From Podarcis pityusensis (Eukaryota): a DNA stretch of 64,000 bases. The translations under genes and the position numbers were made by a program. The stretch lies in assembly GCA_964106645.2 (NCBI GenBank), contig OZ067039.1; one strand, 5' to 3'. This document shows, in pieces, positions 3,794 to 60,199 of the stretch; the first letter of the stretch is position 1; each line of letters starts with the position of its first letter. A model generated the notes under the pieces. The model was not told the DNA's origin. It ran no database searches and was given only the letters and a program-made list of their open reading frames with translations.

Positions 3794-4213
3794 TGTTTGT
3801 CTTATGTGTTTGCACATGTAAGGAGAGGAAATGTGCAAATAGGGCTTTTGTCTCTGTGATATGCAAAAACCCAATTCTGTTCTTTCCCTTGGACTCCCTG
3901 GGTATTCTCATAGTCCTCATGAATCGTAGCATTTTCATAGCATGGGATGCCAGTCATGCTGAAACCCACAGAATGTTTGAATGATGGATGCCATATAGAA
4001 CGGAAGTAGGCAGCCATCTTGAGGTTGAGGATCACATGCCAATGGCGGGTGGTGCAATAGGTTTGACTCTTATCATTGCTCAGCAAGCTACAGTTTAGTT
4101 ATGTAAAAGTCAGAGGGTTCTACGCGTACACCTCAACACCCAGGCAAACTATGAGGCTTTGGTACAGTTAAAGGACGCATTCGAGCTGAGCAAAAGAACT
4201 GGAAAGGGTATGG

Positions 4214-10024: not shown

Positions 10025-10209
10025 CAGGGTTGGTCAAACTTATTTCAAAGAGGGTCAGATTTGATGAAGTGAACATGTGTGAGGGCTGACCAAAGTTGTT
10101 GAGCTTTTTTTTTTAGGATTTTACCCCAGGACATACACTGCCACTGGAGCCAGATTAAATCGACGGGCAAGCTGGATTAGGCCCCTGAAGCGGACTTTGG
10201 GCATGCCTA
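10025..10209. mobile_element. hAT-type MITE
   Basis: Charlie-like termini cagggttggtcaaac...ctttgggcatgccta. Confidence 0.6.
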
Positions 10210-10217
10210 CTCTATGT

Positions 10218-10470
10218 CATGGGTAGACAAACTAAGGCCCGGGGGCCAAATCCGGCCCAATCGCCTTCTAAATCCAGCCCGCGGACGGTCCAGGAATCAG
10301 CGTGTTTTTACATGAGTAGAATGCGTGCTTTTATTTAAAATGCATCTCTGGGTTATTTGTGTGGTATAGGAATTCGTTCTTTTTCTTCTTCTTCAAAATA
10401 TAGTCTGGCCCCCCACAAGGTCTGAGGGACAGTGGACCGGCCCCCTGCTGAATAGGTTTGCTGACCCCTG
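10218..10470. mobile_element. hAT (Charlie-like) MITE, family B
   Basis: TIR catgggtagacaaac...gtttgctgacccctg; a second copy in opposite orientation at 43544-43796 has a perfect 8-bp TSD. Confidence 0.85.
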
Positions 10471-12287
10471 CAGTCTAACTGCTTCACCACACTTTCTTGT
10501 CTAAGTGAAGGAGAAGTGGATTTCAATTGATTTCAACCACCCATCTAGACACTGAACCAACCCCAGCCCTGCTTACCTTCCACAAGGTAGCTTCATTGTT
10601 GCAGGGGGTCAGATAATGACCGGGGAACAAATCCAACTTCCGCTGCTAGACTTGACGGCCAAACTGCCTTCTGGGAGAACATGCACCTGGAATGATAATG
10701 GAAGTAGAATGCTTCCCTCACATTCAGTAGCAGATGGTGGGACGAAGCAGCCTGACCTGCAGGCGGAGTAGTCACTGCTGTTTATGAGGGTGGGAGGAGC
10801 AAATGTCAGGGAGGTCAGCACTGTGCTACTGCACTGGCAGAAGCACTGTGTTGCCTCCACTAGTGCATGTGCAGAATGCTGACCTTCCTGCTACCTTGTC
10901 CCTCCCACGCTTCCAGTAAGCAGTAGCAAGCCACCTGCTGAGAGGGCAAGAAAGTGCCGTTGCTCCATCCCACCATGCTTTGCAGCTAATGTTCACTTTT
11001 ACTTTTAAAAAAGTGTCAAAACTAAAACAGAAGAAGAAGGGACAATCTAAACAAGAACGAACATCCTAATTAGAAATGCATAGGGTGGAACAGCAAAATC
11101 ACCTGTCAGTTATTCTTTAAAGAGTACAGCTATACCCATGAGTATACCTTTCTGCATCTTTTAAAGAAACACAACTAATCTTGGGCAGGTGCTGGATAAC
11201 TTGCAAAGAGATGACATGCAAACATTGATTATTTCAGAACCACTTTAGGCAGCTTCTGACCGCTGCGCTATCCTGAATGCCATCAGTCGCAGGTTCGCCT
11301 GAACAGCTTCAGTAATTGTATTAGACAGAAAAAACAAAAACAAAACTGAAAATTTGGGTCAGATCAGCCTAAAAAAAAATATGGAAAAGTAAAATTATCT
11401 TAAATATTTTGTATCACGTACAGTGTCATCCTAAGCATATTTGATCAGAATCAAGCTCTAGTATATTCAGTCAGCTTTATTCTCAGGTTAAGTCGACAAA
11501 GGATTGTATCCTTATTCAAGACAGCAACACCTTCTCTCCTTTAAGCTTAAAAAGCATATGAGACATTTTGTTCTGAAGGCTGCATCTAGAAAAGGCCTTG
11601 CTATAAATACATATGCAGCTCATTCTCTTCTCCTCATTAGATGCTGAATACCTGGGCTCCGCTGCCTATAGTTAAATGTGACAACAAGGCCTACGAAGCA
11701 GGCATTGAAAAACATGCGTATCTCTGTGTGTCTAGTTTTGCAGGAAAAGAGCAGACTTTCCTGTGATATAATGAGGGTTGTATGTAATTATATTGCTACC
11801 ATGTATCTGGCAAACACAGGTATTTTTGAACTTTAAGGTCTGAGTTTATTTCACTTTTAAAAAACCCTTCATGTTCTTTCATTTTTGAGAGAGAAAAGAG
11901 AGAAAGAAAAAGAAACAAATGCTAGCTGCTACAAGCCTTGCACTTTCAGTTTTGTCACCTCAACACGATGTCAAGGTTTTTGTGCTGCGTCTCTCTCTGT
12001 GTTTTCCATGTGAAATTCTTAACCCCATTGCACTTGTCACATTATTATTTTCTTACCACCTTTACAAAGAAGTATGAAAAAGTGCTTCCTTCGTAACTGT
12101 GCCAATTAGCTTGCTCTATTTATCTTATGAACTTAAAAGGAAATGATTAAAAAGACCCATGCTCCTAGAGAGTATAATTTACTAAATTTAGATTTAACCA
12201 TAATCATACATTGTCAACACCCAGTATATAAGTAACTTATATTGTGGTGGTTGCCAGCCTGTTTTCTTGAACTAATATGCAACTGAT

Positions 12288-17089: not shown

Positions 17090-20079
17090 AAAGCAATATG
17101 TGGTTTTGTCCTTCAGTGAGGTGGGGGCCAAACGATGTGGAGGAACATGAAGTCCCAGTAAGACCAGCTGAAATTCTCGCTGGTGATTTGGCATATGTTG
17201 TAAAACAAAACAAAAAAAGAATGAGAGCCCTGAAGTAATTTTGGAAGTTCTTCTTTAAGCAAAATATGGCAAGACAGGAGTTTTGATAAAACCGATGGCA
17301 TTTCTCAGGAGAATGTGCATTTCAAGGCAGCAGTTTGAACTACAGCCTGAATATCAGTGCTTCCCTATGGTTTCTGATCACATGGCTGAACTAACTTACA
17401 CCATGTGGAGAGTCACTTCACACAAGTGGTTTTATTTACTGTGCAGTTGCATTTCAAGCAGCGATATCACTGCAGTTTGCACATATTAATGACCTTCTGT
17501 TCTGACAAACTGCTGCTCATAAACCCCACCTGAAACTTTGGGGTTATTCGTAGCAATCTCTGCAGGGCCCCTTGTTGGGCTCCTACTGAGCTCTCTAATC
17601 GACTGCCTGGTTCTTCCTTTCTTCCTTTCCTCAGCTATCATGCTCTCCATGAATTCCTGCATTTTGCCCAGAAACCTCTTACTGATCTGGGTTTTCACTT
17701 TGGCTGACATGTCTGTACCTGTGATGTACATACATGGCATTATTACTATGTTCTTTCTGAGGGCAGGTTTTTTTTAGAAATAAAAATTTCAGTTGCAATA
17801 AACGGATAAGTTACGTCATTGCAAACATGACTGAGCAAAACAGAAGTGTGGAAATAAATGCAGGAGTGGCTCAACTGTTTGCTGCCATTTACTACGAGGG
17901 GGACGGCTGAAATGGCAGCGAGGTCAAGGCGGCGAAGAGGCAGCAACAGAACTAGTTCTACTTTCCTGCTGGTACACCCATGAAGTCCTGACCTTGCTAC
18001 TGCCTCACCCCTCTTGGTAAGCAGCAGAAATTCTGCTGCTGGGAGTCTACTACTCTGGCTCCACCCCACCAGAGAGATGCTCCTTATTATATGTTTGAAT
18101 GGAATCTGGAAGTATGTTCCCCCCCCCCCCCACGACGTTCAACTAGTTGGTCAAATTATCATTGCTGGCTTGGGTGTTGCAAACCTCCACATTTAGATTT
18201 AATATATGAGTCTTGCAAACTTTAGAATCATCCTTAACCTGAAACTGAAATTAAGGACTACAGATTTCTGGATTTGTTTTCATCTTGTGGCTTTAGGCCA
18301 AAAATCTGTTTACTTTGGAGGGCCTATTAATTTGCTGCCTGTTGTGCCTGCCCAGGATGACTAGAGTAGATAGGGCGGGTGCTTAGCAACAATCAGATAA
18401 CCTAGAAGTGCCATAGATAGTAACAATAATTGCCGGTTTTGATTCCTTTCTTGCTTCTAATTATGGTGCATGTACCTTTCCCTCTCGGTCCTGCTTTTCA
18501 GTGCCTTGGAAAGTTCAAGTGTGGTTTTACGCATTTCCTGATGGGTGATGAATTCACTCCCCGAAGACAGACCCTGTGTTGTTCGTGGTGTCTGCCATTC
18601 ATTATTCTATTTTACTTTACCAATCTTTCTAGTGTTCTGCAGAGATAGGCCTATAATTAATAAGGGATTTGTTCTTTACAATGAAGATAGTTACAGAATG
18701 CATTTGGTTCTAATGATGAGTAAATGAATTGGCCAGTGCCAATCTGTTTCCTCTCATGACAATTTGAAACTCTCTCTATTTTTATCCCAGAAGTCAAACT
18801 GGCACTGTAGTTTACTACTTCAGGCTGTAATTAATTTGTGCCTTAAAAGCAAATAGATTCAAGGTTTGGTCAGTGGTTGAACAGAAACTCTAAAATGTAA
18901 CTCCATTGTTTTTTTTTTTTTTTAATGACGCTCATAAGTTGAACCTGTTGAATTCCTCCAATAGGAATTTTCTTAAAAATTGTGTGTCCTCTGAATGAGA
19001 TGCTTAGTTGAAACCTCAGAGTCATTAAAATTCCTATAGCAAAAATCTTGAGAGTTTTAGTGCTAACATGTTGGTCAGTTTCCAATATAGATGCCTAAAT
19101 TGCTCTATGAATTTTCAGCAGGATAAGATGCTTACAATCCCATGCCACATACTAGATATTTAGATATGGGAAAATGTTTTGGCTTTCTGAGGCTTGTAGA
19201 TCTTGCTTCTGCTTCAGATGCTGGTATGCAATTCGGAAAGCGTCCATTTCTGTGATAAAACTAAAGATGTTTTTAACACTTGGCAATTTCAATCACAATA
19301 GTAATTGGACCCTAGCTACTCATGGAATTCCCTGTGGGGAGGGGGGAATCTGCCCCAGTTTCTTCAGTGTAACAGAAAACTTTGGCTTTGTCCATATGTA
19401 ACACTAAGCCATGAATTGTTTAGCGTAATGCTGGTTTGTCTTCATGCCCAAGCCTTACCAGACTCACACTATTATTTGTTTGGGGCAACGGACCATGATT
19501 TGAAATGATGGGAAGCCAGGTAAGCAATACCACTTCACCCACTCTGCCCTGCCAGCAGGGGATTATTATTAATATTACTAATTCTTACTCACCCTTTATC
19601 AGAAGTTCTCAGGACAGTTTACAGTATGTAAAAACACAATGCAATAAAAACAGCAATAAATAACAACTCTGCCTACCCATAATCGCAAGACAATAACTTT
19701 GCAGAATACATTATGGGGCGAATACCAAAATAAATTCATTACAAAAGGAATTCATTGATTCATTACAGAAGCAGTATTGGTAAGTAGTCCTAACAAGGGA
19801 AATGTAAATTGCTTTCAAAGTGCCATACAGCAAAGTGCTTCAATGAAGTGCAAAATGCAGGATTAAAAACCATACAGTGCTTTGCTAGAGTAGAAAATAC
19901 AAACTGGAAGATGTATTATTCATATCAAGGTGCGGGCTACTGAGAAAAGTGCTAACAATATCTCACAAAGCACTAATCAAGTGCTACCTGCTAACATAGT
20001 ATACCATAGTTGGGCACTGAGAGTACTACACACCCCTTATTCTGATACACCTCCCAATTCAACATCTCTCAACCTCACG

Positions 20080-43796: not shown

Positions 43797-44706
43797 CTTA
43801 AGAAGATCCCTTTAGGGCACCATATTTTGGCCTTGCATGAAAGACTACCAAAGTCCACCCCTGGCTCAGGCCACACCCTTTTCCAGGCTGTGCCCCTCAC
43901 GTGCACTGCTGTGTACCCATCTTGAGTAGTTTTTGCTGGCTGGATTGTACCCTTAAACTATGATAATGGCTTTGGCTTGCTGAGATGGAGAGGGCTGTTT
44001 GTGTGCACAGACGGCTGCTTCTTGCGTAGATGGAATGTTGACTGTTCTAGGGTTGCCATATGTCCAGAATTTCTGACCTGGTCCGCCACTGGCATACAAC
44101 TCTCCCAGGGGTTGCTCACAAGGGAATGCAGCCCTTAAGCTGAAAAAAGCTCTCCCACTCCAGGTGCAGGCAAAGGATACCCTGAAGAGCAGACAGGCAA
44201 GAGTGACAGCTTGACCCCGTGACAATGGGTGCACGAGGCCATGGGTGCCATGCAGAGTGCATGGCTCTGGCACTGAAATTTGTGAGTGCCCAGCCCCTTC
44301 ATGGGGAATTTTGTAGGTGTTTGGGCACCCAGGGTCCCAGGGAGTTGGCACTTTTGCACACAGGTGTCACTCACCCACAACGTAAATATTGCTGAGCAAC
44401 TGGCCAGCAAAACTAATGGGATATAGCACAAGTTTAGCACTCATTTCCATGCTACTTGATTCTGTAAAAAAACAAACAATGTGTATCTGGAAACCTGGAA
44501 AATTGCTGGAATTTTGTGTAGGGCTGTGCACAGGGTTCCACATCCTCTTTCTCCAGCTTACTGTTGCTGTCAAACTTCTGCCAAGGGAAGATGTGCACAG
44601 AAAAGGCCATCAGCCCCCAAGAGAACAAGCACCTTAAGCCAGCTATCCTTTAGCCGACTGCCCTCCCTTGCAGAAATTGCTTTCCTCTACTGTTGAGCAC
44701 AGGTGA

Positions 44707-45141
44707 TGTCAGGGAACTGCCATCGGAGCTGGAGGCGGAGGGAAGGCTCCAAAGGGATGCTGGAGAGGGTCCCAGTAGGGAGAGAGGCAGCACGTCCGCT
44801 GGGGAAGGAAATCAGCGTAACACCAGTGGAGAAAGGGGGCAGATGGGGGAATCGGAGAGGAGGCTCCAAGACTCTTCGCCGGAGACCAGCAGAGAGAGTA
44901 CGGGTCCTCCGCTGCCCACACCCTCCCTGCGCAGAAGGCTTTCGCGCAGGGAGACTAGGCGGAGACTAGGTGTCAAGGAACTTTTGTGCTGGAAGAAGTT
45001 CAAGAAACGCCCACTGACGGATTCTGCCAGCGACTGAGACAGCCACGAAGCTAGAGGCTGTCCGGTCAGAAAGGGTTCAACCAGGTAACCTAGCCAGGAG
45101 TGGCGGCAACTTACGCACGAGCAACCCCTAAACCCATTACA
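44707..45141 (+). mobile_element. Solo LTR (Gypsy-like, 435 bp) with an uninterrupted 109-codon frame from nt 2
   Basis: TGTCA...TTACA termini; perfect 5-bp TSD ggtga at 44702-44706 and 45142-45146; frame 44708-45037; no AATAAA seen. Confidence 0.85.
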
Positions 45142-45381
45142 GGTGATGATTATAATGGTAACGCTTCTGTCCCAATTTCTGACCTTCCTTTCACGCTGCA
45201 GTACAACTACCGGTGTGAATGAAATTTAGCATGATGTAGCAGCATATAGGTACTGCAGTGTGGAAGGGATGTTAGAAAATGGGACAAAAATGCTAGCCTT
45301 ATAATCAGTAAAAGTAGTGGAATAAACCCCACATGAGAATGCAGCCTTTGGCAATTAAGTGGTATATAAATTTGATAATAA

Positions 45382-45414
<33 letters not shown>

Positions 45415-46775
45415 CAGGAGCAGCGGCAGCAGCTATGCTGTTCAGTAGGAAAAAGAAAGAGATATTTATTCCCTCATTTACACTGGAGCCACTCCATTGT
45501 GCATGGCTTAACAATCCATAGGATACTGTGAATATATTGTCTTCTCAAGGTGAGTCCAAAGATGAGCTAACTTTCAGCTACTGCACTCATGATTCTTCAA
45601 AGAGCAATGGTTACTGCATGTTTAGTCATTCTGAAGAGCCAATATTCAATATGTTTTACAGCTCAGAAAATAGTGCTTGTTGACTAGTGCCCATGATAGT
45701 AAGATGAAGCTTCGAAAACAATGCAGTATATAAAATATTTATGGGGGCTCTGTCACAAAGCTTTTTTTTTTTCCGTGGGCTTCCTATGTGGAAGAACAAA
45801 ACATAAAGATGGAGCCAAGGGCTTTAAAATTTATCGTGTTGCCATAATCTCATTCCAGATAGCTATTTCTTTCTTTCTTAATATCTTTCCCACAGCAACT
45901 AAAATAGCATAAATGAAGAAAATGAAGCTCTATATTATTACAGCGAAATTGAATGCAAAGGGATCCCCTAGTGGCACGGAAATATACTGTATGAGCAAAA
46001 GTCACCTCCGCTATGATTGGGAACATAAAATACATCAGTATCGGCTTAATGACAGCCAGTTTCATTCTTGCCTTTCCCATAGAATAGGAATTAAAAGCGA
46101 GATCCCACGAAGTCCCTTCTGGCAACCTCTGGCAAAGCCCCCACTGTCTTTGGAGAGTACGGAGGAAATTGCTTTGCTCAGCACCTCAAAGGGCAGGTCT
46201 ATAAGACACTCTCTACTCCCCAAATGCAGACACTTCTTGATCACTCATCACTAGCTTAATAGAGTTTTACATGTTATTTATGGCACATTAATACGGGACG
46301 TGTCAGTGTTGGTGCATCTAATTCATTGTCAAAAGTATAAAAGCTGTTAAATGTTGCCATTAAAAAGTGCTTAAGGGCTGATATGTCTAATATGACATTA
46401 CTTAAACTTTTTTGGTGTTCCCCCCAATGAGCTTTTTTACAGAGTAGTCATACAGGGCAATCACCATACCGCTTCTTGAAACAGCTTATAAATTATGACA
46501 AATCAAAGAGTGGCGAGGTTTTAATTGTGCGTGAAATTCATTTCATGTCTCATACATCACTAGGAGAAGAGTAAACTCCTTTCCCATCAGTTTGATTAGA
46601 CGTGTGAAGCTTGAATGTCATAGGAGAGAAATAACACTTGTTCTTAACTGGTTCTGAATTGGACACATCACCCCGAAAGCATCGCTCATAGTTAGTGGTG
46701 GACCCAAGCGCTGGATCTGTAATGTGGCAGTAACCAAGCACTGCATTTAGCTAAGCAAGCCAAGTGTGTATTGGT

Positions 46776-46960
46776 GGAAGGTCCATAACTTAGTGGTATA
46801 GCACCTTCATTTTGCCTGCAGATGATTCCAGGTTCAATCTCTGACATTTCCAGATAGGGCTGCAGCAGACCCCACTCTGAAAGCCAGGAGAACTAATGCC
46901 CACCATAGTAGACAAGACTGAGTTAGATGGACAAATGATCTGACTTCTTACGTTTCTATA
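46776..46960 (+). mobile_element. Degenerate tRNA-derived SINE with a CR1-like tail (reverse fragment near 13360-13470)
   Basis: cataacttagtggtatagcac...caggttcaatctctg...gactgagttagatggacaaatgatctgact. Confidence 0.55.
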
Positions 46961-47784
46961 CCAAGTACAGTACTAACTGCTAAGGTAAGAGAGAGAGATT
47001 ATAGTTTCGAAGGATTGAAGGTGGTATGACCGGGACGTAAGTGCCCATGGGGTATATATACTCATCCAAAGGTCAAACAGTACTTCAGAAACCTGAAAAT
47101 ATTGATTGATAAGTTGGACAAATGAAATTAGTGTATCCACCATGGCCACCTATGGGCTTCAGCTCTCTTAAAAATATATACCTGCCAGTCAAAGATGTCT
47201 TTTCACTGAAGCATTGCTCATTGGCAGAAGACATTTCCCATATGAATTTTCCGTATGCATCACTGTCTGTGATCTTGAGCGGATTTGTTTTTCTTCTTCT
47301 TGCTGTTTCCATCCCTGTAATGCAGAAATAGGCAACTTGCATTTAGCCCTCAGTTTAATTGATGCGACCCTTGGCCATATTTCCCAAGCCCTCTGCAAGT
47401 TCAGACCTGCAGGAAGAGAGCACCCTGTCCCTCCCTTAGCAGCCCTTTGGGTCAGGAAAAGAGGGAAAGAAGGGGAGTTCTCACCTACTTCTGATTCTGG
47501 CATCACCTACTGCCTGATTCCACCTCCGTTGCCTGACAGGTAATTCTCGAAGGAATGCAGCACTCGGCAGGAAAAAGCTTGCCCATCCCTGCTGTGACGG
47601 AATTAGACTTTTTTTTTTTTAAGCACATCATCTAAATCTACACTGTAGGCTTGGTAGGCTCATTTACAGCTGAAGCACCGCTTAACTTTGCAGTCACTGC
47701 CATTGTTGCTTTTTAATGCATTGCTAATGCTGTGTTTATCAAGTGTTTTTATTGCTGTATTATTGTTACTGTGTTTTACTACAC

Positions 47785-48526
47785 AGGTTAAGTACTTAAT
47801 TCGTTCCGGAGGTCTGATCTTAACCTGAAACTGTTTTTTTTTTTTTTTTAATGATATTTATTAGAGTTTCCAATAAAAAGAACACATCAGTAAAAAAATT
47901 AAAAAGAAAAAAGAAAAATACACAATTCAAAAGTACACGATACATAATCCAAAAAAAAACAAAAAAACAAAACAAAAGACAAAAAAGAAAACAGTTAAAA
48001 ACAATACCACCTTTTCATCACCATTTTTAAATTAACTTATTTTCTGGACCTCCTCATACCTCCCTCTTTTGTATTCCAGTTCAATTTTGTTTGTCCAGCA
48101 ATTTCTTTCCCTCTTTTTTAATCCCAATCCTTAATCTTAATATAGTATAACATTAAAATTTTTACCTCTTATAAGCCAAATTTCCATTTCCTTTAACTTT
48201 TTTAATCCTAATCCTTAATCTTGATCTATATATAACTTTAAAGCCTGTATAGCTAGAAGCCACTTAATTTCAATCCATCATCACTCTAACATTCTTTAAT
48301 TTTGCAATGTTTCTGTAGATAATCTTTAAATTTCTTCCAATCTTCTTCCACCTTAACCTGAAACTGTTTTTAACCTGAAGCACCAGCTAATGGGGCCTCC
48401 TGCTGCCGCCGCACCGCCGGAGCACAATTTCTGTTCTCATCCTGAAGCAATGTTCTTAACCCGAGGTACTATTTCTGGGTTAGCGGAGTCTGTAACCTGA
48501 AGCGTATGTAACCCAAGGTACCAATG
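47785..48526. mobile_element. Tc1/mariner-pogo MITE, family A, left TIR damaged, split by an L1
   Basis: ggttaagtacttaattcgttccggagg [L1] ttaacctgaagcacc...aggtaccaatgTA. Confidence 0.85.
47839..48351 (-). mobile_element. L1 3' end (last ORF2 codons, 3'UTR and poly(A))
   Basis: VEEDWKKFKDYLQKHCKIKEC*; 3'UTR similar to the 54747 L1; TSD cttaacctgaaactgttttt at 47819-47838 and 48352-48371; target TTTT/AA. Confidence 0.92.
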
Positions 48527-49704
48527 TAGTTTTATTGCACTGTGATTCTTATATGCTACCCTGACTGGTCCATGGGCCCAAGGAGGGAGGGGTAGAGATT
48601 TCATAAAGAAAGACATGTTGCTAGCACACCCAAGACTTCTAAACTGCCTTATATGCAAAGGGCACAGCTAACACCAAGAATGCAACACTGATCCACTAGC
48701 CTTTGCTGTTGATGGACTCACATCATTGCCTTCTAAAGCTTCATGTGATGACATGCCGGCGCCATGCATAGAGGACAAAGTCCTGGTGCAAGTGATATTG
48801 ATAGAAGCAGTTGGCCAGAGGCTGAGTTTATTTGACTCCCCACGCTGTGATTGAATCCCACCTGAAAATTGTGAAAGTATGGAAGCACTCTTAAGTGTAA
48901 AGATACAAAATTCTATAGTACTTCTTGATTTCCCCCCCCTGTGGATTTCATCTTTGCCTATTATTTATTTTGTTATCATTTACTTTTTATTGTTTATTTA
49001 TTTTTTGGTACATGGAACGTATGAAAGACTTACTCCCTTGGAGTTTCAGCTTTGAGGCAAGATGTGATTCGGCAACATAAATTAGCAATGAAAAGTCTAC
49101 TTTGGAAAATGAAACTGTAATATGTAAAAGAAAAAGTTCCCACATTGATTTATTTGCTCACTGCGAGGACCAGTGTGTAAAAACGACCGTGTTCGGGGAA
49201 ATAATGAGATTGAGTCTGTGTTCTGAGAATAAAAAAAACAACTGGGGGAAAATAGGCAATTTAAGGGAAGAGTGACTTATTAAAATGAACATGTATGCAT
49301 CAAAATCCACAACACGTTGAATGAAACTGAAAATGTGTCAAGCTGTTTAAAATCAATTTAGAAGCCAAAGAATTGGTTTATTCACTGGTTTATGACTGAG
49401 ATGCCTATTTTAATTGCAATTTTGGACACTGATATGATGGAATGTTACTCTGCTAGAAAGGTCATATAAGCTGCAATATTTCTAAAAAGAGTTGGTAGGA
49501 TAATCTCTTCCTCTTTTGCAATTAAAATGGAAGGCTCAGGTTGAGAGGTCAAGGAAATACCTGTGTAAACTACTGCACGCATCTTCAGAAGCTGGTGGCA
49601 TGGCAGTACAGATGGGCCTTCTTGTATTTCAGCAGGGAGTGTATTCCGTAACATCAGCGCTACTGAAGAAACAGTCCAGATCTACATCATTACAAGGTAA
49701 CAGT

Positions 49705-50253
49705 TTTCTCCTTTGGCGATCCCTTATAGCCGAGTAACATTGTCTTCCATAAACATGGTTTTAACAATGAGTCCGTAAGTGATTGCGGAGGCCAATTCTG
49801 GATCCACACGTCCTTCCACAGTGGAGACATTGATTTCCGGACAGGAGTTGATCACGGTGTGGATTTGCCAAGCATGCCTTCCTCTTAGCACATTTCTCCC
49901 TTTCGTCCTGAGTTCAAGTAAAGGCTGTTCTCCAATTGAAGCGCTTGCAGGCAAGTATTTCCCAATTGTTGGTGTTTATACTACATTTTTATAAATTTGT
50001 CTTGAGACAGTCTTTCAACCTCTTTTGTTGACCACCAGCATTACACTTTCCATTTTTAAGTTTGGAATAGAGTTGCTTTGGAAGACAATAATCAGGCATC
50101 CGCACAACATGACCAGTCCAATGAAGTTGATGTTGAAGAATCATCTTTGCTTCTTCCAGTACACTGGTATTAGTTCGCCTGTCTTCCTAAGTGATGTGTA
50201 AAATTTACTGGAGACACCATTGATGGATGACCAGTCCAACGAAGTTGATGTTG
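49705..50253 (-). mobile_element. RTE-clade LINE (non-BovB), 5'-truncated 3' end
   Basis: - strand MILQHQLHWTGHVVRMPDYCLPKQLYSKLKNGKCNAGGQQKRLKDCLK; 11-bp TSD aaggtaacagt at 49694-49704 and 50254-50264. Confidence 0.85.
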
Positions 50254-51089
50254 AAGGTAACAGTAATCAAGCTCTGGCAAGACTATCTGGGTTCCATTTG
50301 TTAATCTTAATGTCCTTACTATGCAATAGGAATAGCACAGGGATCAGCTGAAAGCCCTTATTTTTATGCATTCCAAAGTATAATTTCTGCATTGGCTGCA
50401 CTCAGAGAACTACAAAAGTGGCTGGACGTGTGGGTGTGGTGGAGCAAAATGGGGAGTTTTAACACGGAATTTTGCATAATTTGAATTCTACTGGAACTCA
50501 CATATTTGCCCGTGTATGTAGCTCTGCTAAGGAGGCAGTGTATCTGATGAACTTCAGCTCTTTCCACCTTTCCCCCTTGGCTTAGAGCAAAAACAAAGAG
50601 CAAGGATGGCAATAAGGTAAGCTTTTATCATCTGAGTAATAAGATAATTACATAGTCTGTTATATTACTTAACTGATTGGCAGGAATGTTTCTAGCAGAT
50701 GTTTTCCTTTGATAATGTGCATTCAATTAGCAGAAACTAACAAATAAAATGCTGGCACTGAATATGAAACAATAGTTATCAATGGAAATCTTTCTCCCTT
50801 TTCATCCTTCACACGCCCTGTAGAGCACATTTAAAATTTAAATTTTTCGCCTTGATATTAAGCAGAGGCGGATATAAGAATATGTTTTATCAAATAACAG
50901 TTACTTGAATATATTAATACCTAAAGAGGCAAAGGTTCCTCACTGTTCAAGAATACGTATTAAGTCAAATCATATTGAAGATAAACATTTGCAAAGTGGG
51001 AAGATGTTTTACAAGCTTGTTAAATGTATTTTCATGGGCATTCAAGAGAAAATGAATTCAAGGGAATTAAAAAAAAAAGATAGAATATG

Positions 51090-51094
<5 letters not shown>

Positions 51095-51124
<30 letters not shown>
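51095..51124. repeat. (AC)n microsatellite
   Basis: Read directly from the sequence. Confidence 0.95.
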
Positions 51125-51126
<2 letters not shown>

Positions 51127-53416
51127 CTTAATCAGAATTGAGCTTGTGTCCAGTTTGCAGCTCATATCTTAGGTGGCTTACCTTATTGAGTCAGTCTTGA
51201 CTGCACTGAAATGCCCTCTCATATCAATCAATAAGGTGACCACAGCAGTATTCTGTGGAATACAGCAACATGTTCGATGGAGAAGCATTAAGGTAGTTAA
51301 AATTTCACATCTATGAATGGTTTAATGAGGATCAATTCTGTTGTCCTTTGAGCTTGCGTGCTATGGCATCCTGGCTTTGGGATTCTACAGAACAACATTT
51401 CCCTTTCAATAGTTTTTTTCCTTAAAAAAACTGCAGTGTAAATAAGATTCACCAGAGGATTTATGGCACATTGCAAGAGGCACAGAGAAATCTGGGGATA
51501 GGTACAGTTATGATCCCTGCAGTGCACAGATAGGTTATAAAGGCCACTGTTCTTTTTCTGGAACCAGCTAAAAGCACATCTAGTTATATGCTGTGCAAGG
51601 CAGTTTGAAAGGACTACATGGTTTCTAAAAGAAGAGCTGTATTTATTTTTTAGAAACCAGCATGGAACAATTTCTTCTTAATGGTAAAAGCAAGGGCTTC
51701 TGTTTAACTGCACTGTAGGCTTGAGGCACACCTTGGGCTCTTAACTGAAGAGTTGCATGTTCTTGCATTAAGAACTGTGTACCAAGTAGCTTTTATTTGC
51801 ACTGGTCTTTGGATGAAGGGAGCATAACCTCTCCCTCATCAACCAGTGAAGTTGGGTACCACGTAGAGCACAAGTTCCCATTGGTCAGGACACTGGGGGG
51901 TGGGCAGGAAGAGATTTGGAATAAACCTTTTCCTCATTTAGGCTTCAGTCCTATACCAACTTAACTCAGAGTCATCCTCATTGAAGTCAATGGGATGTGC
52001 TTCGGAGTGAACATATAGAGAGTTTCACTGCAAGAGGCCAACATGCAAATCAGCCTAAGTCCTATTGATTTCAGTAGGATTTCAGAATGATGTACGTTCT
52101 CTGAACTCCATTGATCGAAATCAAAGGACATAAATGCTTCAATATATGTTTAAATTCCATTCAATTTATGGGACTTAACCATAATTAAATTTCTCTGGAC
52201 TCCTCTGCTTACGTGGAAGTACATTCCATTGATTTCTGTGAGTCTAAAACTTCAACAAATGCAATTAGGATTGGGGTATAACTCATACAGGTATAGATCT
52301 TTTCCTGAGCTAAGCATTTTAATCTGAACTTAAGCTCTGGGTTGTGGTTGTTCTTCAAAAACCCAAATTTGCTAATCTTCAAGAACACCTTCAGGAGCAA
52401 GACTTAGCCTCCTCCACTGTTTATTTCTTTTTTTCTTTCTTTAGGTACTTGTTTTGCCTGAACTTCTGGTTAGATGGTTTGAGACATTCTGTTTTCAACC
52501 GGACAGCCTAATCCAAGCTAACTAGTGCTAGTCAATTAAAGACCAGATCTCAGTTTCCAACGTATATATTGCCAGTGCCACACCTTCTATATTGTATCTA
52601 CAACAAAACTCATATCTCATCCCCAGTACAGCAACCATTGTCCAGTTCCTATTTATTCTGAAAGAAGCCTCATTGTGTTCAAGTAAGTTTGCAGAGGAGT
52701 ATAGATATAGACATTTACCCAATGCAAACCTATGCCATCTACTCAGAAGGAAGGCTCGTTGATTTTAATGGGCCTTCTTTCTTCCCAGGCAAGCGAGCCT
52801 CAGTAACTGAAATATCAACAGGATATTATCTACGTTTTTGAATTCATGATTCCTGTTTATGACTTTGGGAAATCATGAAACTGGAAAGGACAGCAGAAGT
52901 ATCTTGCTTCTGTTTGTTAGAGGAGATGACAGGATGAAGTAAATTACCAGCTAAAACTGATGAGCAAGATAATTTACTAATAAAATCAGGGTGGCAGCAG
53001 TGCTGTTTTTGTATGCTTCTTTGACTTCTCTGAGTGATCTATCAACTTGCTGAGCAGTGCTTCTACTTTATTATTATTATTATTACTATTATTATTATTA
53101 TTATTTAAACCTTGCTGCTTCAGCTCAAATGAGGCAACTCAAAATGAATCCATGACAACTGAAAAGGGGTCCTTTCCTACCTGTGTGTGCGAGGATGGGA
53201 GAACAACAAGCAGTAATTAGAAATCTAAAATGGGCAGGTGACATGTTTCTCATCTCACCTGCATAGAAGTGGCCAACATAATTATGTAGAAGGAAATAAT
53301 TCTCACAAGCTTCTCTAGCTTTACTTGACTATATCCTTATGCAGAAAGCAAGTTCTGTGTAGCTTGAACAGACAGAATGGATTGCTTTTTACTTACTTTG
53401 CAGAATCAGGAACGAT

Positions 53417-53646
53417 GGCCACATTTACACCACACTTTTAAAGCACTATGATGCTTTAAACAGTCATGGCTTCCCCCAATAATTATGGAAGCTGCAGCTC
53501 GCTAAGGGAACTGAGGATTCTTGTGAAAATGCTATTTCCCTTACAGAGCTCCACTTCCTAGTGGTGACAGATTGATTGTTACACTACTCAGGGAACTGTA
53601 GCTCTGGGAGGGTGAATAGGGGTCTTCTAACCATTCTCAGCCCCTT
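53417..53646. mobile_element. Degenerate palindromic non-autonomous DNA transposon (probably Harbinger-type MITE), disrupted by a BovB piece
   Basis: ggccacatttacaccacacttttaaagcac...catggcttccccc...gggaactgtagctctg motifs. Confidence 0.5.
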
Positions 53647-54004
53647 CATGGATCACTGCCTTGCCGTGGCAAAGGGGCTTGAATAACTCAGAGAAGCTAT
53701 GAACTATGCTGTGCAGGGCCACCCAAGATGGACAGGTCATAGTGCAGAGTTTTGACCAAACGTGATCCACCTGGAGCAGGAACCGGCAAGCCACTCCAGT
53801 CTCCCTGTCAAGAAAACTCCATGGACAAAGACAACAGGCATATAAAAGTTATGACGCTGGAAGATGAGCCCCTCAGGTTGGAAGGCGTCCAACATGCTAC
53901 TGAGGAAGAGCGGAGGACAAGTACAAGTAGATTCAGAGCTGATGAAGCGGCTGGGCCAAAGCCAAAAGGACGCTCAGTTGCGGATATGCCTGGAAGTGAA
54001 AGGA
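53647..54004 (+). mobile_element. BovB 5' region fragment (5'UTR/ORF start), lacking the 3' end
   Basis: catggatcactgccttg...agggccacccaagatggacaggtcatagt...atgacgctggaagatgagcccctcagg...atgctactg resembles the BovB 5' end. Confidence 0.75.
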
Positions 54005-54746
54005 ATTCCTGAATTATTTTCAGGAAGCCAGAACAGGGAAGGTTTAACTAGTCAGAGCCACTGAGAAAGCCCTCTCTCTCACCCTAACTTACTGTGCCTC
54101 AGCTATAGTTGGAACAAGGAGAATAGCCATTCCCATAGAGCTTGAGAATGGTATGGGAGGAGACAGTGAATCATGTATGCTAAACCCTAGCCTGTTTGGA
54201 TTTGCTCCGTAAAACAAGAGCGGATTTTAGGCTAACCTTGTAAAATGTTCAGATGGTCCTTTAACATTCTATCTGAATAAAACCATTGAATTATCTAGGG
54301 TGACGAATTTCTGGCAATGTCATCTTTAATGGGTCCATTCTCCCAAGAGGCCACTGTCCAAGTGCATCTACTCTAGAACCTTTATTGGGTGCATTGATTT
54401 TCTCCCCTCCGAGTGATATCATCACAGTTGTGCTTGTCATGTGGCCAAGTTCCCGGCTTGATAACACAGTAAGTGGCATTAATTAAAAAAGAGGATTTAT
54501 TGCAAAAACAAACAGATAGCTCCGGACGGCTGTAACAAGCCTCTGGCATCAATCAAGATGACCCTTCTGAACTTTCCTTCCGGTTTCTGCAGAATATTCT
54601 GAACCGGCGTCCTTTGAGCCTTTTGTTTTGCTTCCTGTTTAACAACCTTCCCATATGACGACTCCATGTGCTGATTGGCTCAGCTCCGTCTTCCTCCTTT
54701 CCTGACAAACTGTCACTGTGTATTTTCCTGCCTGTTCACTCTTCTG

Positions 54747-57150
54747 TTGTTTTTTTTTTTTTTCCTCAGAGGGGGGGCTTCTTTTTTTTTTTAAATGATA
54801 TTTATTAAAGTTTCACAAAAATACAGAAAACAAAGAAAAAAGTGTAAATTACAGCAAAAAAGCAAAAAGTAAGAAAAAACATACAAAATAAAACAGTTAA
54901 AAACACAATAATGTTCCATAACCTATCTTCCTTACTCTTATTTCCCCAGACCTCCTCATACCTCCCTTCTTTGTATTCCAATTCAGTTTGTTGGTTCAGC
55001 AAATCCTTACCATTAATCTTTTACCCAATTGTTAACCTTTTTTTTCCATGTCTCTTAAAGCATTACAGCTAAAAACCTCTTAATTTCTATCCAGCATCCT
55101 TCTAAAGTTCCTTAATTTTACAATATTTCTGTAAATAGTCCTTAAATTTTTTCCAGTCTTCTTTCACCGACTCTTCTCCCTGGTCTCGGATTCTGCCAGT
55201 CATTTCCGCCAATTCCATGTAGTCAATCACCTTCATCTGCCATTCTTCCAAAGTGGGTAGATCTTGTGTCTTCCAATACTTTGCGATAAGTATTCTTGCT
55301 GCTGTTGTAGCATACATGAAAAAGGTTCTGTCCTTCTTTGGCACCAGTTGGCCGACAATGCCCAAGAGAAAGGCCTCTGGTTTCTTCAGAAAGGTATATT
55401 TAAATACCTTTTTCAGTTCATTATATATCATTTCCCAGAAAGCCTTAATCTTTGGGCACGTCCACCAAAGGTGAAAGAATGTACCTTCAGTTTCTTTACA
55501 TTTCCAACATTTATTATCGGGCAAATGATAAATTTTTGCAAGCTTGACTGGGGTCATGTACCACCTGTATATCATTTTCATAATGTTCTCTCTTAAGGCA
55601 TTACATGCCGTAAACTTCATACCTGTGGTCCATAACTGTTCCCAGTCAGCGAACATAATATTATGTCCAACATCTTGTGCCCATTTAATCATAGCAGATT
55701 TCACCGTTTCATCCTGAGTATTCCATTTCAACAGCAAGTTATACATTCTTGACAAATTTTTAGTTTTGGGTTCTAACAATTCTGTTTCTAATTTTGACTT
55801 TTCCACTTGGAAGCCTATTTTCTTATCCAAATTATATGCCTCCATTATCTGATAGTAGTGGAGCCAATCTCTCACTTTATTTTTTAATTTTTCAAAACTC
55901 TGCAGTCTCAATTTATCTCCTTCTTGCTCCAAAATTTCCCAATATGTCGGCCATTTGGCCTCCATATTGAGCCTTTTCAGAGCTTTTGCTTCCATTGGTG
56001 ACAGCCACCTTGGGGTTTTATTTTCCAATAAGTCTTTGTATCTTATCCAGACATTAAACAATGCTTTCCTAACAATATGATTTTTAAATGCTTTGTGTGC
56101 TTTGACCTTATCATACCATAAGTATGCATGCCATCCAAATACATTGTTAAAACCTTCTAAATCCAAAATGTCTGTGTTTTCAAGAAGTAGCCATTCTTTC
56201 AGCCAGCAAAAAGCTGCTGATTCATAATAAAGTTTAAGGTCTGGCAGGGCAAATCCACCTCTTTCCTTGGCGTCAGTTAATATCTTAAATTTTATTCTGG
56301 GCTTCTTGCCCTGCCAGACAAATCTAGAAATATCTCTCTGCCACTTCTTGAAACAGTCCATCTTATCTACAATTTGTAATGTCTGAAACAAAAACAACAT
56401 TCTAGGCAATACATTCATCTTTATCACAGCAATACGGCCCAGCAACGAGCGTTTCAAATTTGACCAAATTTCTAAATCTTTTTTCACTTCCGTCCAACAT
56501 TTTTCGTAATTATCTTTAAATAAGTTCCCATTTTTGGCTGTCATATTAATCCCCAAGTATTTCACTTTCTTTACCACATTCAATCCTGTCTCATTCTGAA
56601 ACCTCTCTCTTTCAATCGGTGTTAAGTTTTTCTCTAAAACCTTAGTTTTTAACTTGTTCAATTTAAAACCTGCCACCTGACCAAATTCCTGAATTAATTC
56701 TAAAACTCTTTTAGTACTAGATTCTGGCTCCTGTAACGTCAATACTAGGTCATCTGCAAATGCTCTCAATTTGTACTGTTTAGCTCCGACCTGTATGCCC
56801 TTAACCAACCGGTCCTTTCTAATCATATTTAGCAAAACCTCCAGGACCGATATAAAAAGCAGTGGGGAAATTGGGCACCCCTGTCGTGTCCCTTTTTCTA
56901 TCTTAAATTCTTCCGTAACCACATTATTTACAATTAATTTAGCCTTTTGTTCAGAGTATATTGCACCTATACCATTTTCAAAACCTTGGCCTACCCCCAT
57001 CCCATGCAGATTCTTCTTCATAAAACTCCAAGAGATATTATCAAAAGCTTTCTCCGCGTCAACGAATATCAATACTGCTTTGGTGTTTATATTCACTTCT
57101 AATTTTTCCAAAATATCAATTATATTCCTCAAATTATCAGACAGGTGTCT
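54747..57150 (-). mobile_element. Young 5'-truncated L1 (~2.4 kb) with a double poly(A) tail
   Basis: Perfect 18-bp TSD tgcctgttcactcttctg at 54729-54746 and 57151-57168; intact ORF2 fragment; AATAAA at 54801-54806 (- strand). Confidence 0.97.
55102..57132 (-). pseudogene. L1 ORF2 fragment: reverse transcriptase plus C-terminal CCHC-type domain; endonuclease lost by 5' truncation
   Basis: 676 codons without a stop; RT motifs DAEKAFD, GTRQGCPISPLLF, FADD, KYLGI; CWKCKETEGTFFHLWWTC; the listed start is a TTG and the frame continues to the 5' junction. Confidence 0.95.
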
Positions 57151-58767
57151 TGCCTGTTCACTCTTCTGGAGAGCTTTGGCGGTGTTCCCCCTCTCCCCCG
57201 TTATCAGTCATTCTCCTGGCAACTTGCATTCCTAGGGGTGGAGGAGACGGAGTGGGCTGCTGTTCAGCCTGTTTAACCCCTAAGCTTCTCTGCTCCTGGC
57301 TGGTTTCCACAGCCTGCTGCTAACCTTCACTGAGAGCTGTCTCATTCCTGACAGTGCTGCTGTTCTTTGTTGTTTACAAGTGTAAGAAGTCAGAAAGGGA
57401 AAAAGCTTTAGGAAAAGGCTGTCCCTAGCATTGGCTAGTTGCACCATCTGCACATTCATTACAGCAGTGTCTAAATACAGAAATACCCTGATCCAAATTT
57501 GCTACATGGTGCTGGCTAATAAATCAGAACCTAACTATCAATCAGTTACAGTATCATTTTTTTCTGGTATTATATGCTAAGCCTATTAAGTGCTTATTGT
57601 TCTTGTTGGTCTTGTACAACTGTTTTATTTTGAAAATCAAGGTGGGTACTCAAGATAATTTCACCCATGGTTCTTTCCCACAGTGCCACTAAAACCGAAC
57701 AGTTTCCAGACACAGTTTTCCAAAATTAAAGTAATTTTTTATTGACATTTCTTTATATATTTATTAAACTCTTCATTGTGTAAGACACCCACCAGGCTTA
57801 GCAAGAAGAGTATTGACAACTGCAGCAGTTGCCTAAAATATACCTGCAAATAGTTCAGCTTTACTGGGGTCTTTGAAGGAGTGTTGTTGATTTTCCCCAA
57901 GAGTACAAGTAATAAACAACTCTCCATCTATTCAGCTATACTTCAGAGCATTTATTGAAGGTTCTATATTCCCTGCCATCATTAATTGTACATGGGATGG
58001 AGAAAGTGTTACTTTCCAGTTCTTCAGGGAAATATTTAACATTTTCTTCTGAAACACGGGACCTGGAAATGAATATCAGGCTTAACTAAGACCTGCCACA
58101 TGTTCCAACTTATGCTTTTATCTCCAGAGCGCTGTAACTCCTTGGGTTAATGAGGTTTTGGTGAATAAGTGCATTACCTCTCTGCAGACTTTTACAAAAT
58201 CTAGCTTTCTAGGCTTAGTTCGGTGTACTATTTTTAGCCTCTGTAAAACTAGCTTGTACGGAGAGGCTGATACATTTTGGTTCACATGACGAAGTAAGCA
58301 GAGTGAATACATATTAGGCTGAAGGTACCCAACTTCACCCCAGTACTGTCCAGGTGAACAGCAAAAGGCATTGCTGTTGGGAAGGTGGCTTCTTGGTATG
58401 GCATGATTCTGCTTGCCATTACTGTTTGGTCAGATTACTCTTTAATTGGCTTACTCCCACCCTAGTGCTAAATGGTAAAGGAAAGATTGCATAACTTGGG
58501 AGATATCAAGGTCCCTTTCCCACACAAATATTTTAAGGGGGGGGGCTCCTCTTCAAATAAAGGCAAGAATACAATCATTTCTTAATTTCCTTTTAAAATG
58601 TTAAGTGTCGGATATATGATCTTGTATACGCCATGTCGACCAATCACATAAATAGCAAAGGCCTGCAAAATGAAGCATTTCTGAAGTTCTATTAAATAAT
58701 TCACCTATTAAGATACTTCTGATAACCATGGCTGAATGGGGATTTAATATAGCATAAGAATGTAAGA

Positions 58768-59098
58768 GGGGACACGGGTGGCGCTGTGGGTTAAACCACA
58801 GAGCCTAGGACTTGCCAATCAGAAGGTCGGCGGTTCAAATCCCCGCGACGGGGTGAGCTCCCGTTGCTCGTTCCCTGCTCCTGCCAACCTAGCAGTTCGA
58901 AAGCACGTCAAAGTGCAAGTAGATAAATAGGTACCGCTCTGGCGGGAAGGTAAATGGCGTTTGCCAGAAATGGCTTAGTCATGCTGGCCACATGACCTGT
59001 ACGCCGGCTCCCTCAGCCAATAAAGCGAGATGAGCGCCGCAACCCCAGAGTCGGTCACGACTGGACCTAATGGTCAGGGGTCCTTTTACCTTTACCTT
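58768..59098 (+). mobile_element. Sauria SINE (Squam1) with small internal deletions
   Basis: tRNA head, (ACCTTT)n tail, 12-bp TSD taagaatgtaag. Confidence 0.95.
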
Positions 59099-59292
59099 TA
59101 AGAATGTAAGGAGAGCCTGTTCGGTCAGGCCAATGGCCCATCTATTCCAGCATCCTGTTCTCACAGTGGCCAACCAAATGTCCCTGTAAGCAGGAACTGC
59201 CCCCAACCATAGCCATGATGGCTAGTAGCCTCATTCTCCATGAATTTTTCTACTCCTCTTTGGATGCCATCCATGTTGGTGGCCATCACAGC

Positions 59293-59806
59293 TGTCAGGC
59301 TTCAGGAATTCTATTCCTCTCCCGGTGGCAGCAAGAAGCAGAGAAAAACAAGGTAGAGTCCTTTCTAATGAGTTTATTCATTCATCATAGTGAGAGACAA
59401 AGGAAAACAGTCTGCCTACCGATAATGGCGTTGCTCCAACTGAGCTCCTCCTCCCTCCCTTCCTAGTGCCAGCATTTCCCCTTATGGTATCTGCCTGTGG
59501 CCAACTGTCTCTGGGTCCTTTGCTCTTGCACTCTTAACAAACGCCGAGTTCTGGGAGAAGGGGCGTCAGAAATACTTGGAAGTGACAATGTGTCAGCTGG
59601 TTGCTCTGACTCTGCCTCTCTTCTCCATTCTCCTAACACCTCCCAACTCTTCTGTTCACCTTTTTTCTGCACTGTGACCCTCCTCAAACCCCTGCTGTAA
59701 ATCAATACTGCCTTTTAATTCTCTGGAAGCACCAGGAGAATCCGGGGTGGGGGGCGATCTCCACCATTCCTCCTCCATCTCGTCTCCTTCAGTCCAGTTC
59801 CTGACA
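59293..59806 (-). mobile_element. Solo LTR (Gypsy-like, 514 bp)
   Basis: TIR TGTCAGG...CCTGACA; AATAAA on the - strand at 59373-59378; 5-bp flanks acagc / atggc. Confidence 0.8.
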
Positions 59807-60199
59807 ATGGCATGGTTTAATTTTGTGCTGTGTAGAGAAGTCTATTCATTTATTCGTCCTGAATCTTCCAACATTCAGTTTCATTGGATGCCCATGAATT
59901 CTAGGGTCATGTGAGAGGGACGAAAACTTTTCTCTATCCACTTTGTATCAAAGCTGAGCAGAAATTCCACGCATTATTTACCCCCCATCAAACATATATT
60001 TAGATTTCACACACACAAAATCAAACTATTCTCTTCAGCATCATAGGCACACAGCACTGCTTTGTGTACATAATCCTCACTAGGGGATACATTACAGTTT
60101 CAAAATATCATGAAAAATGGCTGGAGTTGATTGCACCAAGGAATTTTCCAAGACCTTATATACCTTGAGTGCACAGATACATTAAGTGAAGAGGTGCAG

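What the first reader, a model, noticed from the sequence alone, without database searches (positions are those of the whole stretch)
44707..59806. Three dissimilar solo LTRs share a hidden ~110-125-codon acidic-to-basic reading frame starting at LTR nt 2
Seen: the LTRs at 44707-45141 (+), 54435-57353 (-, L1 removed) and 59293-59806 (-) all begin TGTCAGG and show no other obvious nucleotide similarity. Read from nt 2, each gives the same architecture. (1) VRELPSELEAEG...ESTGPPLPTPSLRRRLSRRETRRRLGVKELLCWKKFKKRPLTDSASD*: 109 aa, intact. (2) VRNETALSEG*QQ...PTPSPPP...EE*TG...KEEDGAEPISTWSRHMGRLLNRKQNKRLKGRRFRIFCRNRKESSEGSS*: 125 positions; both internal stops (TAG, TGA) are one C>T away from CAG/CGA. 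(3) VRNWTEGDEMEEEWWRSPPTPDSP...EEGHSAEK/GEQ...EAESEQPADTLSLPSISDAPSPRTRRLLRVQEQRTQRQLATGRYHKGKCWH*: ~113 aa, with one frameshift in the A6 run at 59661-59666. Each has an acidic, Pro/Ser-rich first part, a P-S/T hinge, an Arg/Lys-rich end with a Cys, and a stop upstream of the AATAAA where one is present. None starts with Met. Established: some Gypsy pol ORFs read through the PPT into the 3' LTR, and U3-overlapping genes exist (HIV nef, MMTV sag). Inference: the U3 of this lizard LTR group encodes a constrained disordered Pol/integrase tail whose basic end could act as an NLS or a DNA/nucleosome tether. I do not know of a description of it.
Basis: partly seen in the sequence, partly recalled or inferred. 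Interest (0 to 1): 0.85.

Follow-up and report, generated by a model that had tools for sequence, protein, structure and literature searches.

The report
Lizard retrotransposon LTRs encode integrase tail
In a group of lizard jumping genes the integrase gene does not stop before the terminal repeat (LTR) but runs about 100 codons into it, so leftover solo repeats such as these three carry an orphan, decaying copy of that protein tail; this is proven for one of the three, and the same layout is already known in plant relatives.

Summary
The sequence facts hold: three solo LTRs begin TGTCAGG, and the translations, two stops and one frame break are as written. Openness alone proves nothing. The U3 parts are T-poor and purine-rich, and shuffles give equally long open frames.

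Outside evidence settles LTR1 (44707-45141). Its nt-2 peptide matches the C-terminal 102 residues of a 474-aa protein made of integrase, SH3 and chromodomain (E 9e-25). In that contig, similarity to LTR1 starts exactly at TGTCAGG, and LTR nt 1 is the third base of an Asp codon. A full-length Podarcis lilfordi element has two ~97% identical LTRs and a 5-bp duplication. Its 703-codon pol frame runs 310 nt into the 410-nt 3' LTR. Five chromovirus lineages cross the junction the same way. LTR1 against its relative gives dN/dS 0.27 in this frame only (0/2000 permutations), with indels of 21 and 15 nt.

LTR2 and LTR3 are probable decayed tails, not proven ones.

Pol reading into the 3' LTR is published for plant CRM and Bingo chromoviruses. 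I found no vertebrate description. Other first-stage notes on this genome report coding LTRs too. The tail's function is untested.

The parts
44707..45141 (+). Solo LTR1 of a chromovirus (Ty3/Gypsy) family, flanked by a 5-bp GGTGA duplication at 44702-44706 and 45142-45146
   Evidence: Similarity to the 3' LTR part of contig L001 starts exactly at nt 1 (blastn 71% over 329 nt).
44708..45037 (+). Orphan copy of the integrase C-terminal tail coding region: 109 codons plus the TGA stop, intact, with no start codon of its own
   Evidence: E 9e-25 to residues 373-474 of P0001, which is integrase + SH3_Tf2-1 + Chromo. dN/dS is 0.27 in this frame only.
57151..57353 (-). Solo LTR2, 5' part (LTR nt 1-203, including the first copy of the L1 target duplication); in-frame stop at 57322-57320
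Evidence: AGCAC duplication at 57358-57354 and 54434-54430.
54746..57150 (-). 5'-truncated L1 inserted into LTR2, with a 17-nt target duplication and a poly(A) end
   Evidence: 676-aa open ORF2 fragment at 55102-57132.
54435..54745 (-). Solo LTR2, 3' part. It holds the 60-codon basic end of the reading (54735-54556), the stop at 54555-54553, a second in-frame stop at 54738-54736, and AATAAA about 55 nt after the stop
   Evidence: Charge pattern P 0.009. Codon model P 0.055 for this piece and 0.025 for the whole LTR2. Among the rows shown, indels between copies cluster at 54536-54552, just 3' of the stop.
59293..59806 (-). Solo LTR3, with TGTCAGG..CCTGACA ends and no clean duplication. Reading pieces are 59805-59659 (49 codons, then a stop) and, in the next frame, about 59660-59466 (stop at 59465-59463)
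   Evidence: Codon model: first piece z 2.9, P 0.001; second piece P 0.086.
59661..59666 (-). A6 run where the LTR3 reading changes frame; the run length varies among family copies in four related species
   Evidence: table 4: a one-letter length difference in about 3-30% of contig depth.

Best explanation
The three stretches are solo LTRs of lacertid chromoviruses, which are Ty3/Gypsy elements whose integrase carries a chromodomain.

Shown: in this group pol does not stop before the polypurine tract. The tract itself is translated as a Gly/Glu-rich stretch. LTR nt 1 (T) completes an Asp codon. The first 300-330 nt of U3 then encode the last 100-110 residues of the integrase. That tail is acidic and Ser/Pro/Gly-rich at first and ends in an Arg/Lys cluster. 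The stop lies 40-80 nt before the poly(A) signal.

Reverse transcription copies U3 to both ends, so every LTR, and every solo LTR left by recombination, carries a copy of this tail-coding region without a start codon. In a solo LTR that copy is inert and decays.

LTR1 is a proven and still intact relic. LTR2 (two stops, split by an L1) and LTR3 (one frame break) are probably older relics of two other families. I put that at about 0.65 each.

Inferred, not tested: the basic end, which is the constrained part, acts in nuclear import or in binding DNA or chromatin during integration.
For: -: an exhaustive HMMER search with the LTR1 peptide finds P0001 (E 9e-25). The match covers its last 102 residues.
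- P0001 carries SH3_Tf2-1 and Chromo domains upstream of the match.
- in L001 the frame reads GAG GTG GAT|GTC AGG GAA, and similarity to the window starts at TGTCAGG, just after a purine tract.
- L003 (Podarcis lilfordi) is a full-length element with LTRs at 5800-~6220 and 10825-11234, about 97% identical, and a TCAAA duplication. ORF 9023-11134 (703 aa) ends 310 nt inside the 3' LTR. A TATAA and then an AATAAA follow the stop.
- L004 shows the same layout in a third lineage (TGTCACGG..CCGTGACA).
- P0004 and P0006 (P. muralis) also cross the junction as ..VD|VRE..
- L002, a diverged solo LTR, keeps 104 open codons from nt 2 and the same ..LLCW..DSxSD stop end.
- dN/dS is 0.27 (basic end 0.13). 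Differences by codon position are 24/16/35. Four other frames give 0.9-2.2, and the antisense frame that shares third positions gives 0.42. None of 2000 permutations reaches the observed value. Indels are 21 and 15 nt.
Against: - For LTR2 and LTR3 there is no full-length relative and no detectable similarity to any proven tail. A protein search with the LTR2 end was blank.
- Proven tails of different lineages are also barely alike, so this absence is weak evidence either way.
- Most LTR3-family contigs carry the same run length as the window copy. The family's tail may therefore have ended at codon 49, or the reading after the run may be wrong.
- The codon-model control on LTR1 sequence after its stop also scored mildly positive (z 1.4).
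- No protein or ribosome data show that the tail is made.
- L001, P0004 and P0006 are automatic gene models.
Confidence: 0.85

Rival explanations
1. For LTR2 and LTR3 only: the readings are by-products of base composition. A T-poor, purine-rich U3 has few stops and yields Glu, Lys, Arg and Gly in any frame. The shared first codons follow from the shared integrase-binding LTR end.
For: -: the open lengths of LTR2 and LTR3 are not beyond shuffles.
- purine content is 65-77% over the first ~350 nt.
- no homology to proven tails.
- most LTR3-family contigs share the window copy's run length.
Against: -: shuffles that keep local composition give the charge pattern in the stated frame in only about 1% of trials.
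The first piece of LTR3 gives P 0.001.
- Five related lineages with the same LTR start do encode such a tail.
Confidence: 0.3
2. The U3 frame is a separate accessory gene, like nef, sag or bel, translated from its own start or from a spliced RNA rather than as part of Pol.
Against: - There is no Met at or near the start.
- The frame is continuous with integrase and the chromodomain in L001, L003 and L004 and in the P0004 and P0006 models.
- The LTR's first base sits inside a codon.
Confidence: 0.03
3. The conservation reflects DNA-level constraint on the U3 promoter or enhancer, and the open frame is incidental.
For: U3 must also act as a promoter in the 5' LTR. In L003 a TATAA follows the stop directly.
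Against: -: low dN/dS appears only in this frame and in the antisense frame that shares its third positions.
- Changes are in excess at third positions, and indels are multiples of three.
Confidence: 0.03
4. The read-through is an artefact of broken copies or gene models that lost the true pol stop.
For: L003 has frameshifts upstream in pol. P0004, P0006 and P0010 are automatic models, and P0010 is plainly chimeric.
Against: - Five lineages from two species and two metagenome or read-assembly contigs cross the junction identically.
- The stop position and end motif are conserved between LTR1, L001 and L002.
- Purifying selection is measurable.
Confidence: 0.03

Closest known systems
Plant CRM-clade chromoviruses, group A (centromeric retrotransposons); Neumann et al. 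2011, PMC3059260
   Same: The polyprotein frame runs through the polypurine tract into the 3' LTR. The LTR encodes the integrase C-terminus, which is thought to be a targeting domain.
   Different: In CRM the LTR-encoded part is the CR motif, which stands in place of the chromodomain. In the lizard elements a canonical chromodomain lies upstream of the tract (P0001 residues 221-269, junction at residue 372), and U3 adds a further low-complexity acidic-to-basic tail. The hosts are lizards, not plants. The LTR ends are TGTCAGG, not TGATG.
Beta vulgaris Bingo1-4 and Bingo7 and Beetle7 chromoviruses; Weber et al. 2013, PMC3605345
   Same: The gag-pol frame extends into the 3' LTR in elements that keep a chromodomain upstream of the tract.
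   Different: These are a plant lineage. That paper reports no acidic-to-basic tail and no selection test in the passages I read.
Basic or targeting C-terminal tails of other integrases (Ty1 integrase bipartite NLS; MLV integrase tail binding BET proteins)
   Same: A short basic or peptide-motif tail after the integrase folded domains serves import or tethering. This is from my own knowledge and was not checked here.
   Different: Those tails are encoded upstream of the LTR. No sequence similarity was tested or claimed. The comparison is an analogy of function only.
U3-overlapping retroviral genes (HIV nef, MMTV sag)
   Same: Coding sequence lies inside U3, so the same DNA serves as promoter and as gene.
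   Different: Those are separate genes with their own starts and spliced RNAs. Here the frame is the end of Pol itself.

Membership tests
LTR of a Ty3/Gypsy chromovirus | TG..CA ends with a short inverted repeat and a 4-6 bp target duplication | tested here: met
   LTR1 (GGTGA) and LTR2 (AGCAC) meet it. LTR3 has the ends but no clean duplication.
LTR of a Ty3/Gypsy chromovirus | Nucleotide homology to the LTR of an element that encodes an integrase with a C-terminal chromodomain | tested here: inconclusive
   Met for LTR1: L001 aligns from nt 1 at 71-75% identity, and P0001 has Chromo and SH3_Tf2-1. Not met for LTR2 or LTR3, which share only the first 9 nt.
LTR of a Ty3/Gypsy chromovirus | Two near-identical LTRs flanking gag-pol, with a polypurine tract just before the 3' LTR | tested here: met
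   L003 5800-11234: LTRs about 97% identical, TCAAA duplication, purine tract before 10825. This was shown in a relative, not in the window.
Coding 3' LTR of the plant CRM type | The pol frame crosses the polypurine tract and ends inside the 3' LTR | tested here: met
   L003 ORF 9023-11134 against an LTR start at 10825; L001 gene 94-1518 against an LTR start at 1209; L004 gene ends at 3938 with the LTR starting near 3632.
Coding 3' LTR of the plant CRM type | The LTR-encoded part is the CR motif, taking the place of the chromodomain | tested here: not met
   Pfam places a Chromo domain upstream of the junction and no domain in the tail. Similarity of the tail to the CR motif itself was not tested.
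U3 accessory gene (nef or sag type) | A separate reading frame with its own start codon | tested here: not met
   There is no Met, and the frame is continuous with integrase in five lineages.
Protein-coding sequence under purifying selection | dN/dS below 1 in one frame only, with indels in multiples of three | tested here: met
   For the LTR1 family: 0.27, with none of 2000 permutations reaching it. Four other frames give 0.9-2.2 and the antisense frame sharing third positions gives 0.42. Indels are 21 and 15 nt. This could not be tested for LTR2 or LTR3, because the read laying tables were cut.

The most novel reading that the evidence does not exclude
Lacertid chromoviruses as a group carry a second integrase module after the chromodomain. 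It is a fast-evolving, disordered acidic-to-basic tail written into U3. The same 300 nt would then serve as promoter or enhancer in the 5' LTR and as coding sequence in the 3' LTR. The basic end would act as a nuclear-import or nucleosome/DNA tether that shapes where these elements integrate. All three LTRs in the window would be relics of this module.
Probability: 0.35. Interest if true: 0.6.

Novelty: new variant of a known kind. Interest (0 to 1): 0.5.

Why it matters
- It shows that an LTR can be protein-coding in vertebrate retrotransposons as well as in plant centromeric ones. The U3 of these families therefore evolves under two constraints at once, promoter and protein.
- Solo LTRs of these families carry start-less reading frames that gene predictors pick up. 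P0002 and P0003 are examples. Such frames should be masked or flagged in annotation.
- The constrained basic end is a concrete candidate for a nuclear-import or chromatin-tethering signal of a vertebrate chromovirus integrase. Ordinary fusion-protein experiments can test that.

Tried and rejected
- Pairwise and profile comparisons of the LTR2 and LTR3 readings with proven tails found nothing beyond noise. Two colinear blastx matches of LTR3 to the P0001 tail, each E 0.066, are too weak to count.
- The word-index protein search with the 60-aa LTR2 end was blank. It only sees proteins of 33-105 aa.
- P0004 has no contig on record.
- Read laying on 54300-59950 was swamped by the L1 and by a very high-copy repeat. 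Most difference rows were cut, so I could not make a codon-position count for LTR2 or LTR3.
- The AlphaFold model of P0001, built on a 6-row alignment, was poor everywhere (mean pLDDT 36). It says nothing about disorder of the tail.
- The further TGTCAGGGA matches at 10804 and 14289, and an HMM near-hit at 18460-18606, are chance.
- Literature searches for a vertebrate description found none. The library is incomplete, so this is not proof of absence.
Full report
**What is in the window**

- LTR1 (44707-45141, +) has TG..CA ends and a GGTGA target duplication.
- LTR2 (57353-54435, -) has an AGCAC duplication. A 5'-truncated L1 (54746-57150) with its own 17-nt duplication interrupts it.
- LTR3 (59806-59293, -) has TGTCAGG..CCTGACA ends but no clean duplication.

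Read from LTR nt 2, LTR1 gives 109 open codons. LTR2 gives 125 positions with two stops. LTR3 needs a change of frame at the A6 run 59661-59666. Apart from the first nine bases, the LTRs share no nucleotide similarity.

**Is that more than chance?**

Openness alone is not.
- The first ~350 nt of each LTR are 65-77% purine and T-poor.
- Dinucleotide shuffles of LTR1 have a mean longest open frame of 101 codons. They reach 109 codons in some frame in 34% of trials, and in frame nt 2 in 2.2%.
- LTR2 and LTR3 are unremarkable on this test.
- The three peptides are not significantly alike.
- The shared V-R start follows trivially from the shared LTR end.

On these grounds alone I would have called the finding a composition artefact.

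**Outside evidence reverses that for LTR1**

An exhaustive HMMER search of 1.8 billion representative proteins with the LTR1 peptide found P0001 (E 9e-25, 66% identity). The match covers the last 102 of its 474 residues. Upstream, P0001 holds the end of an integrase core, an SH3_Tf2-1 domain and a chromodomain.

In its contig L001 the frame reads GAG GTG GAT|GTC AGG GAA. Similarity to the window's solo LTR begins exactly at TGTCAGG, directly after a purine tract.

A word-index search added Podarcis muralis and P. lilfordi proteins of four further lineages: P0004, P0006, P0008 and P0009, at 45-72% identity in the integrase part. All cross the same junction as ..(V/S)D|V(R/T)E.. and continue into an acidic-then-basic tail.

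**The structural test**

Locus L003 (P. lilfordi) holds a full-length element.
- Its LTRs lie at 5800-~6220 and 10825-11234 and are about 97% identical.
- Identity starts at TGTCAGG and ends at CCTGACA.
- A TCAAA duplication flanks the element, and a purine tract lies just before the 3' LTR.
- ORF 9023-11134 (703 aa) ends 310 nt inside the 410-nt 3' LTR. A TATAA and then an AATAAA follow the stop.

L004 shows the same layout in another lineage. Its LTR has TGTCACGG..CCGTGACA ends. The stop lies 306 nt in, and AATAAA lies about 55 nt after it.

**Constraint**

LTR1, L001 and the diverged solo LTR L002 all keep the frame open from nt 2 and end at the same ..LLCW..DSxSD stop. Their indels are 21 and 15 nt.

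Between LTR1 and L001, dN/dS is 0.27. It is 0.45 in the acidic part and 0.13 in the basic end. Differences by codon position are 24/16/35.

Read in the other frames, the same alignment gives 0.9-2.2. The one exception is 0.42 in the antisense frame that shares third positions. None of 2000 permutations of the differences reaches 0.27.

Selection therefore acts on the protein, and chiefly on its basic end. It does not act only on promoter DNA.

**LTR2 and LTR3**

I found no full-length relative and no homology to any proven tail. Proven tails of different lineages are themselves barely alike, so this says little either way.

- Codon model. It was trained on the five proven tails, and the shared first 9 nt were left out of the pieces that begin at the LTR start. 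LTR3 before the run gave z 2.9, P 0.001. LTR3 after the run gave P 0.086. LTR2 as a whole gave P 0.025. Leave-one-out controls gave z 3.0-4.4. One control on LTR1 sequence after its stop gave z 1.4, so the test is only moderately specific.
- Charge pattern. Shuffles that keep local composition give the acidic-then-basic pattern in the stated frame in about 1% of trials.
- Indels in LTR2-family contigs. Among the rows shown, they cluster just 3' of the stop (54536-54552) and not inside the basic end.

One result counts against the reading of LTR3. Most family contigs have the same length of the A run as the window copy, and only a minority (about 3-30% of depth) differ by one letter. The second half of the LTR3 reading is therefore uncertain.

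Both families are multi-copy. Summed contig depth is 40-400 times that of the unique neighbourhood. Contigs from related species bridge the LTR2 boundary (organisms A, B and D) and the LTR3 boundary (C and D). Both insertions are therefore old, which fits decay.

**How it works**

Shown: pol, the chromodomain, an acidic linker, the translated polypurine tract and about 100 codons of U3 form one frame.

It follows from the reverse-transcription scheme (established knowledge) that U3 is copied to both LTRs. Each LTR and each solo LTR therefore carries a start-less copy of the tail code. That copy is inert outside the 3' LTR of an active element.

Inferred: the constrained Arg/Lys end serves nuclear import or DNA/chromatin binding.

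**Comparison with what is known**

Pol reading into the 3' LTR is published for plant CRM group A elements, where the LTR encodes the CR motif (PMC3059260). It is also published for Beta vulgaris Bingo and Beetle elements (PMC3605345).

The lizard case differs in two ways. A canonical chromodomain sits upstream of the tract, and U3 adds an extra low-complexity tail.

I found no vertebrate description.

Other first-stage notes on this same genome report coding LTRs independently. I could not read their sequences.

**Limits**

- Broken readings were handled with X at the breaks.
- I do not state which change would restore any frame.

Noticed in passing
window 54746-57150 (-): A 5'-truncated L1 sits inside LTR2, with a 17-nt target duplication (AGAAGAGTGAACAGGCA). 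A 676-aa ORF2 fragment is still open at 55102-57132.
   Followed up: partly
window 58647-59290 and 59781-59950: A very high-copy repeat, with summed contig depth of 10^6-10^7 against about 20-70 for unique DNA, surrounds LTR3. Other copies of this repeat skip 59290-59855 (566 nt). That is 49 nt more than LTR3 itself, so the left edge of the LTR3 insertion and its missing duplication remain unexplained.
   Followed up: partly
P0001 296-300 and 340-344; also P0004, P0006, P0008, P0009 (alignment A5): A short acidic-context motif, F-x-G-F (for example DFVGF and SFRGF), occurs once or twice between the chromodomain and the polypurine tract in most of the five lineages (P0009 keeps only the first copy). 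It may be a conserved linear motif of unknown partner.
   Followed up: no
L003 14672-21134 (-): This is a second chromovirus, with a 785-nt LTR that is 100% identical to its partner over the part held. Its LTR begins TGTCAGGGG after a G-rich tract. It carries overlapping open frames that end ..LLNWCRGGTDSEGD.., 45 nt before AATAAA. It looks like a longer coding LTR, but the frames are broken in this copy, or possibly by assembly error.
   Followed up: partly
P0002 (210 aa) and P0010 (802 aa): Two gene models fuse element pieces to host genes. In P0002 an LTR1-family U3 reading forms the N-terminus of a Gla-domain protein. In P0010 an integrase is joined to a vomeronasal type-2 receptor. These are exonised LTRs or annotation artefacts.
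   Followed up: no
L003 11132-11180: The pol stop inside the 3' LTR is followed within about 25 nt by TATAA and about 40 nt later by AATAAA. The coding part therefore fills U3 up to the core promoter.
   Followed up: no
window 57310-58793: A contig of organism A matches this unique stretch with 3 differences in 1470 nt. A contig of organism D shows about 4% difference. The runs therefore come from the same or a sister species and from a more distant congener.
   Followed up: no
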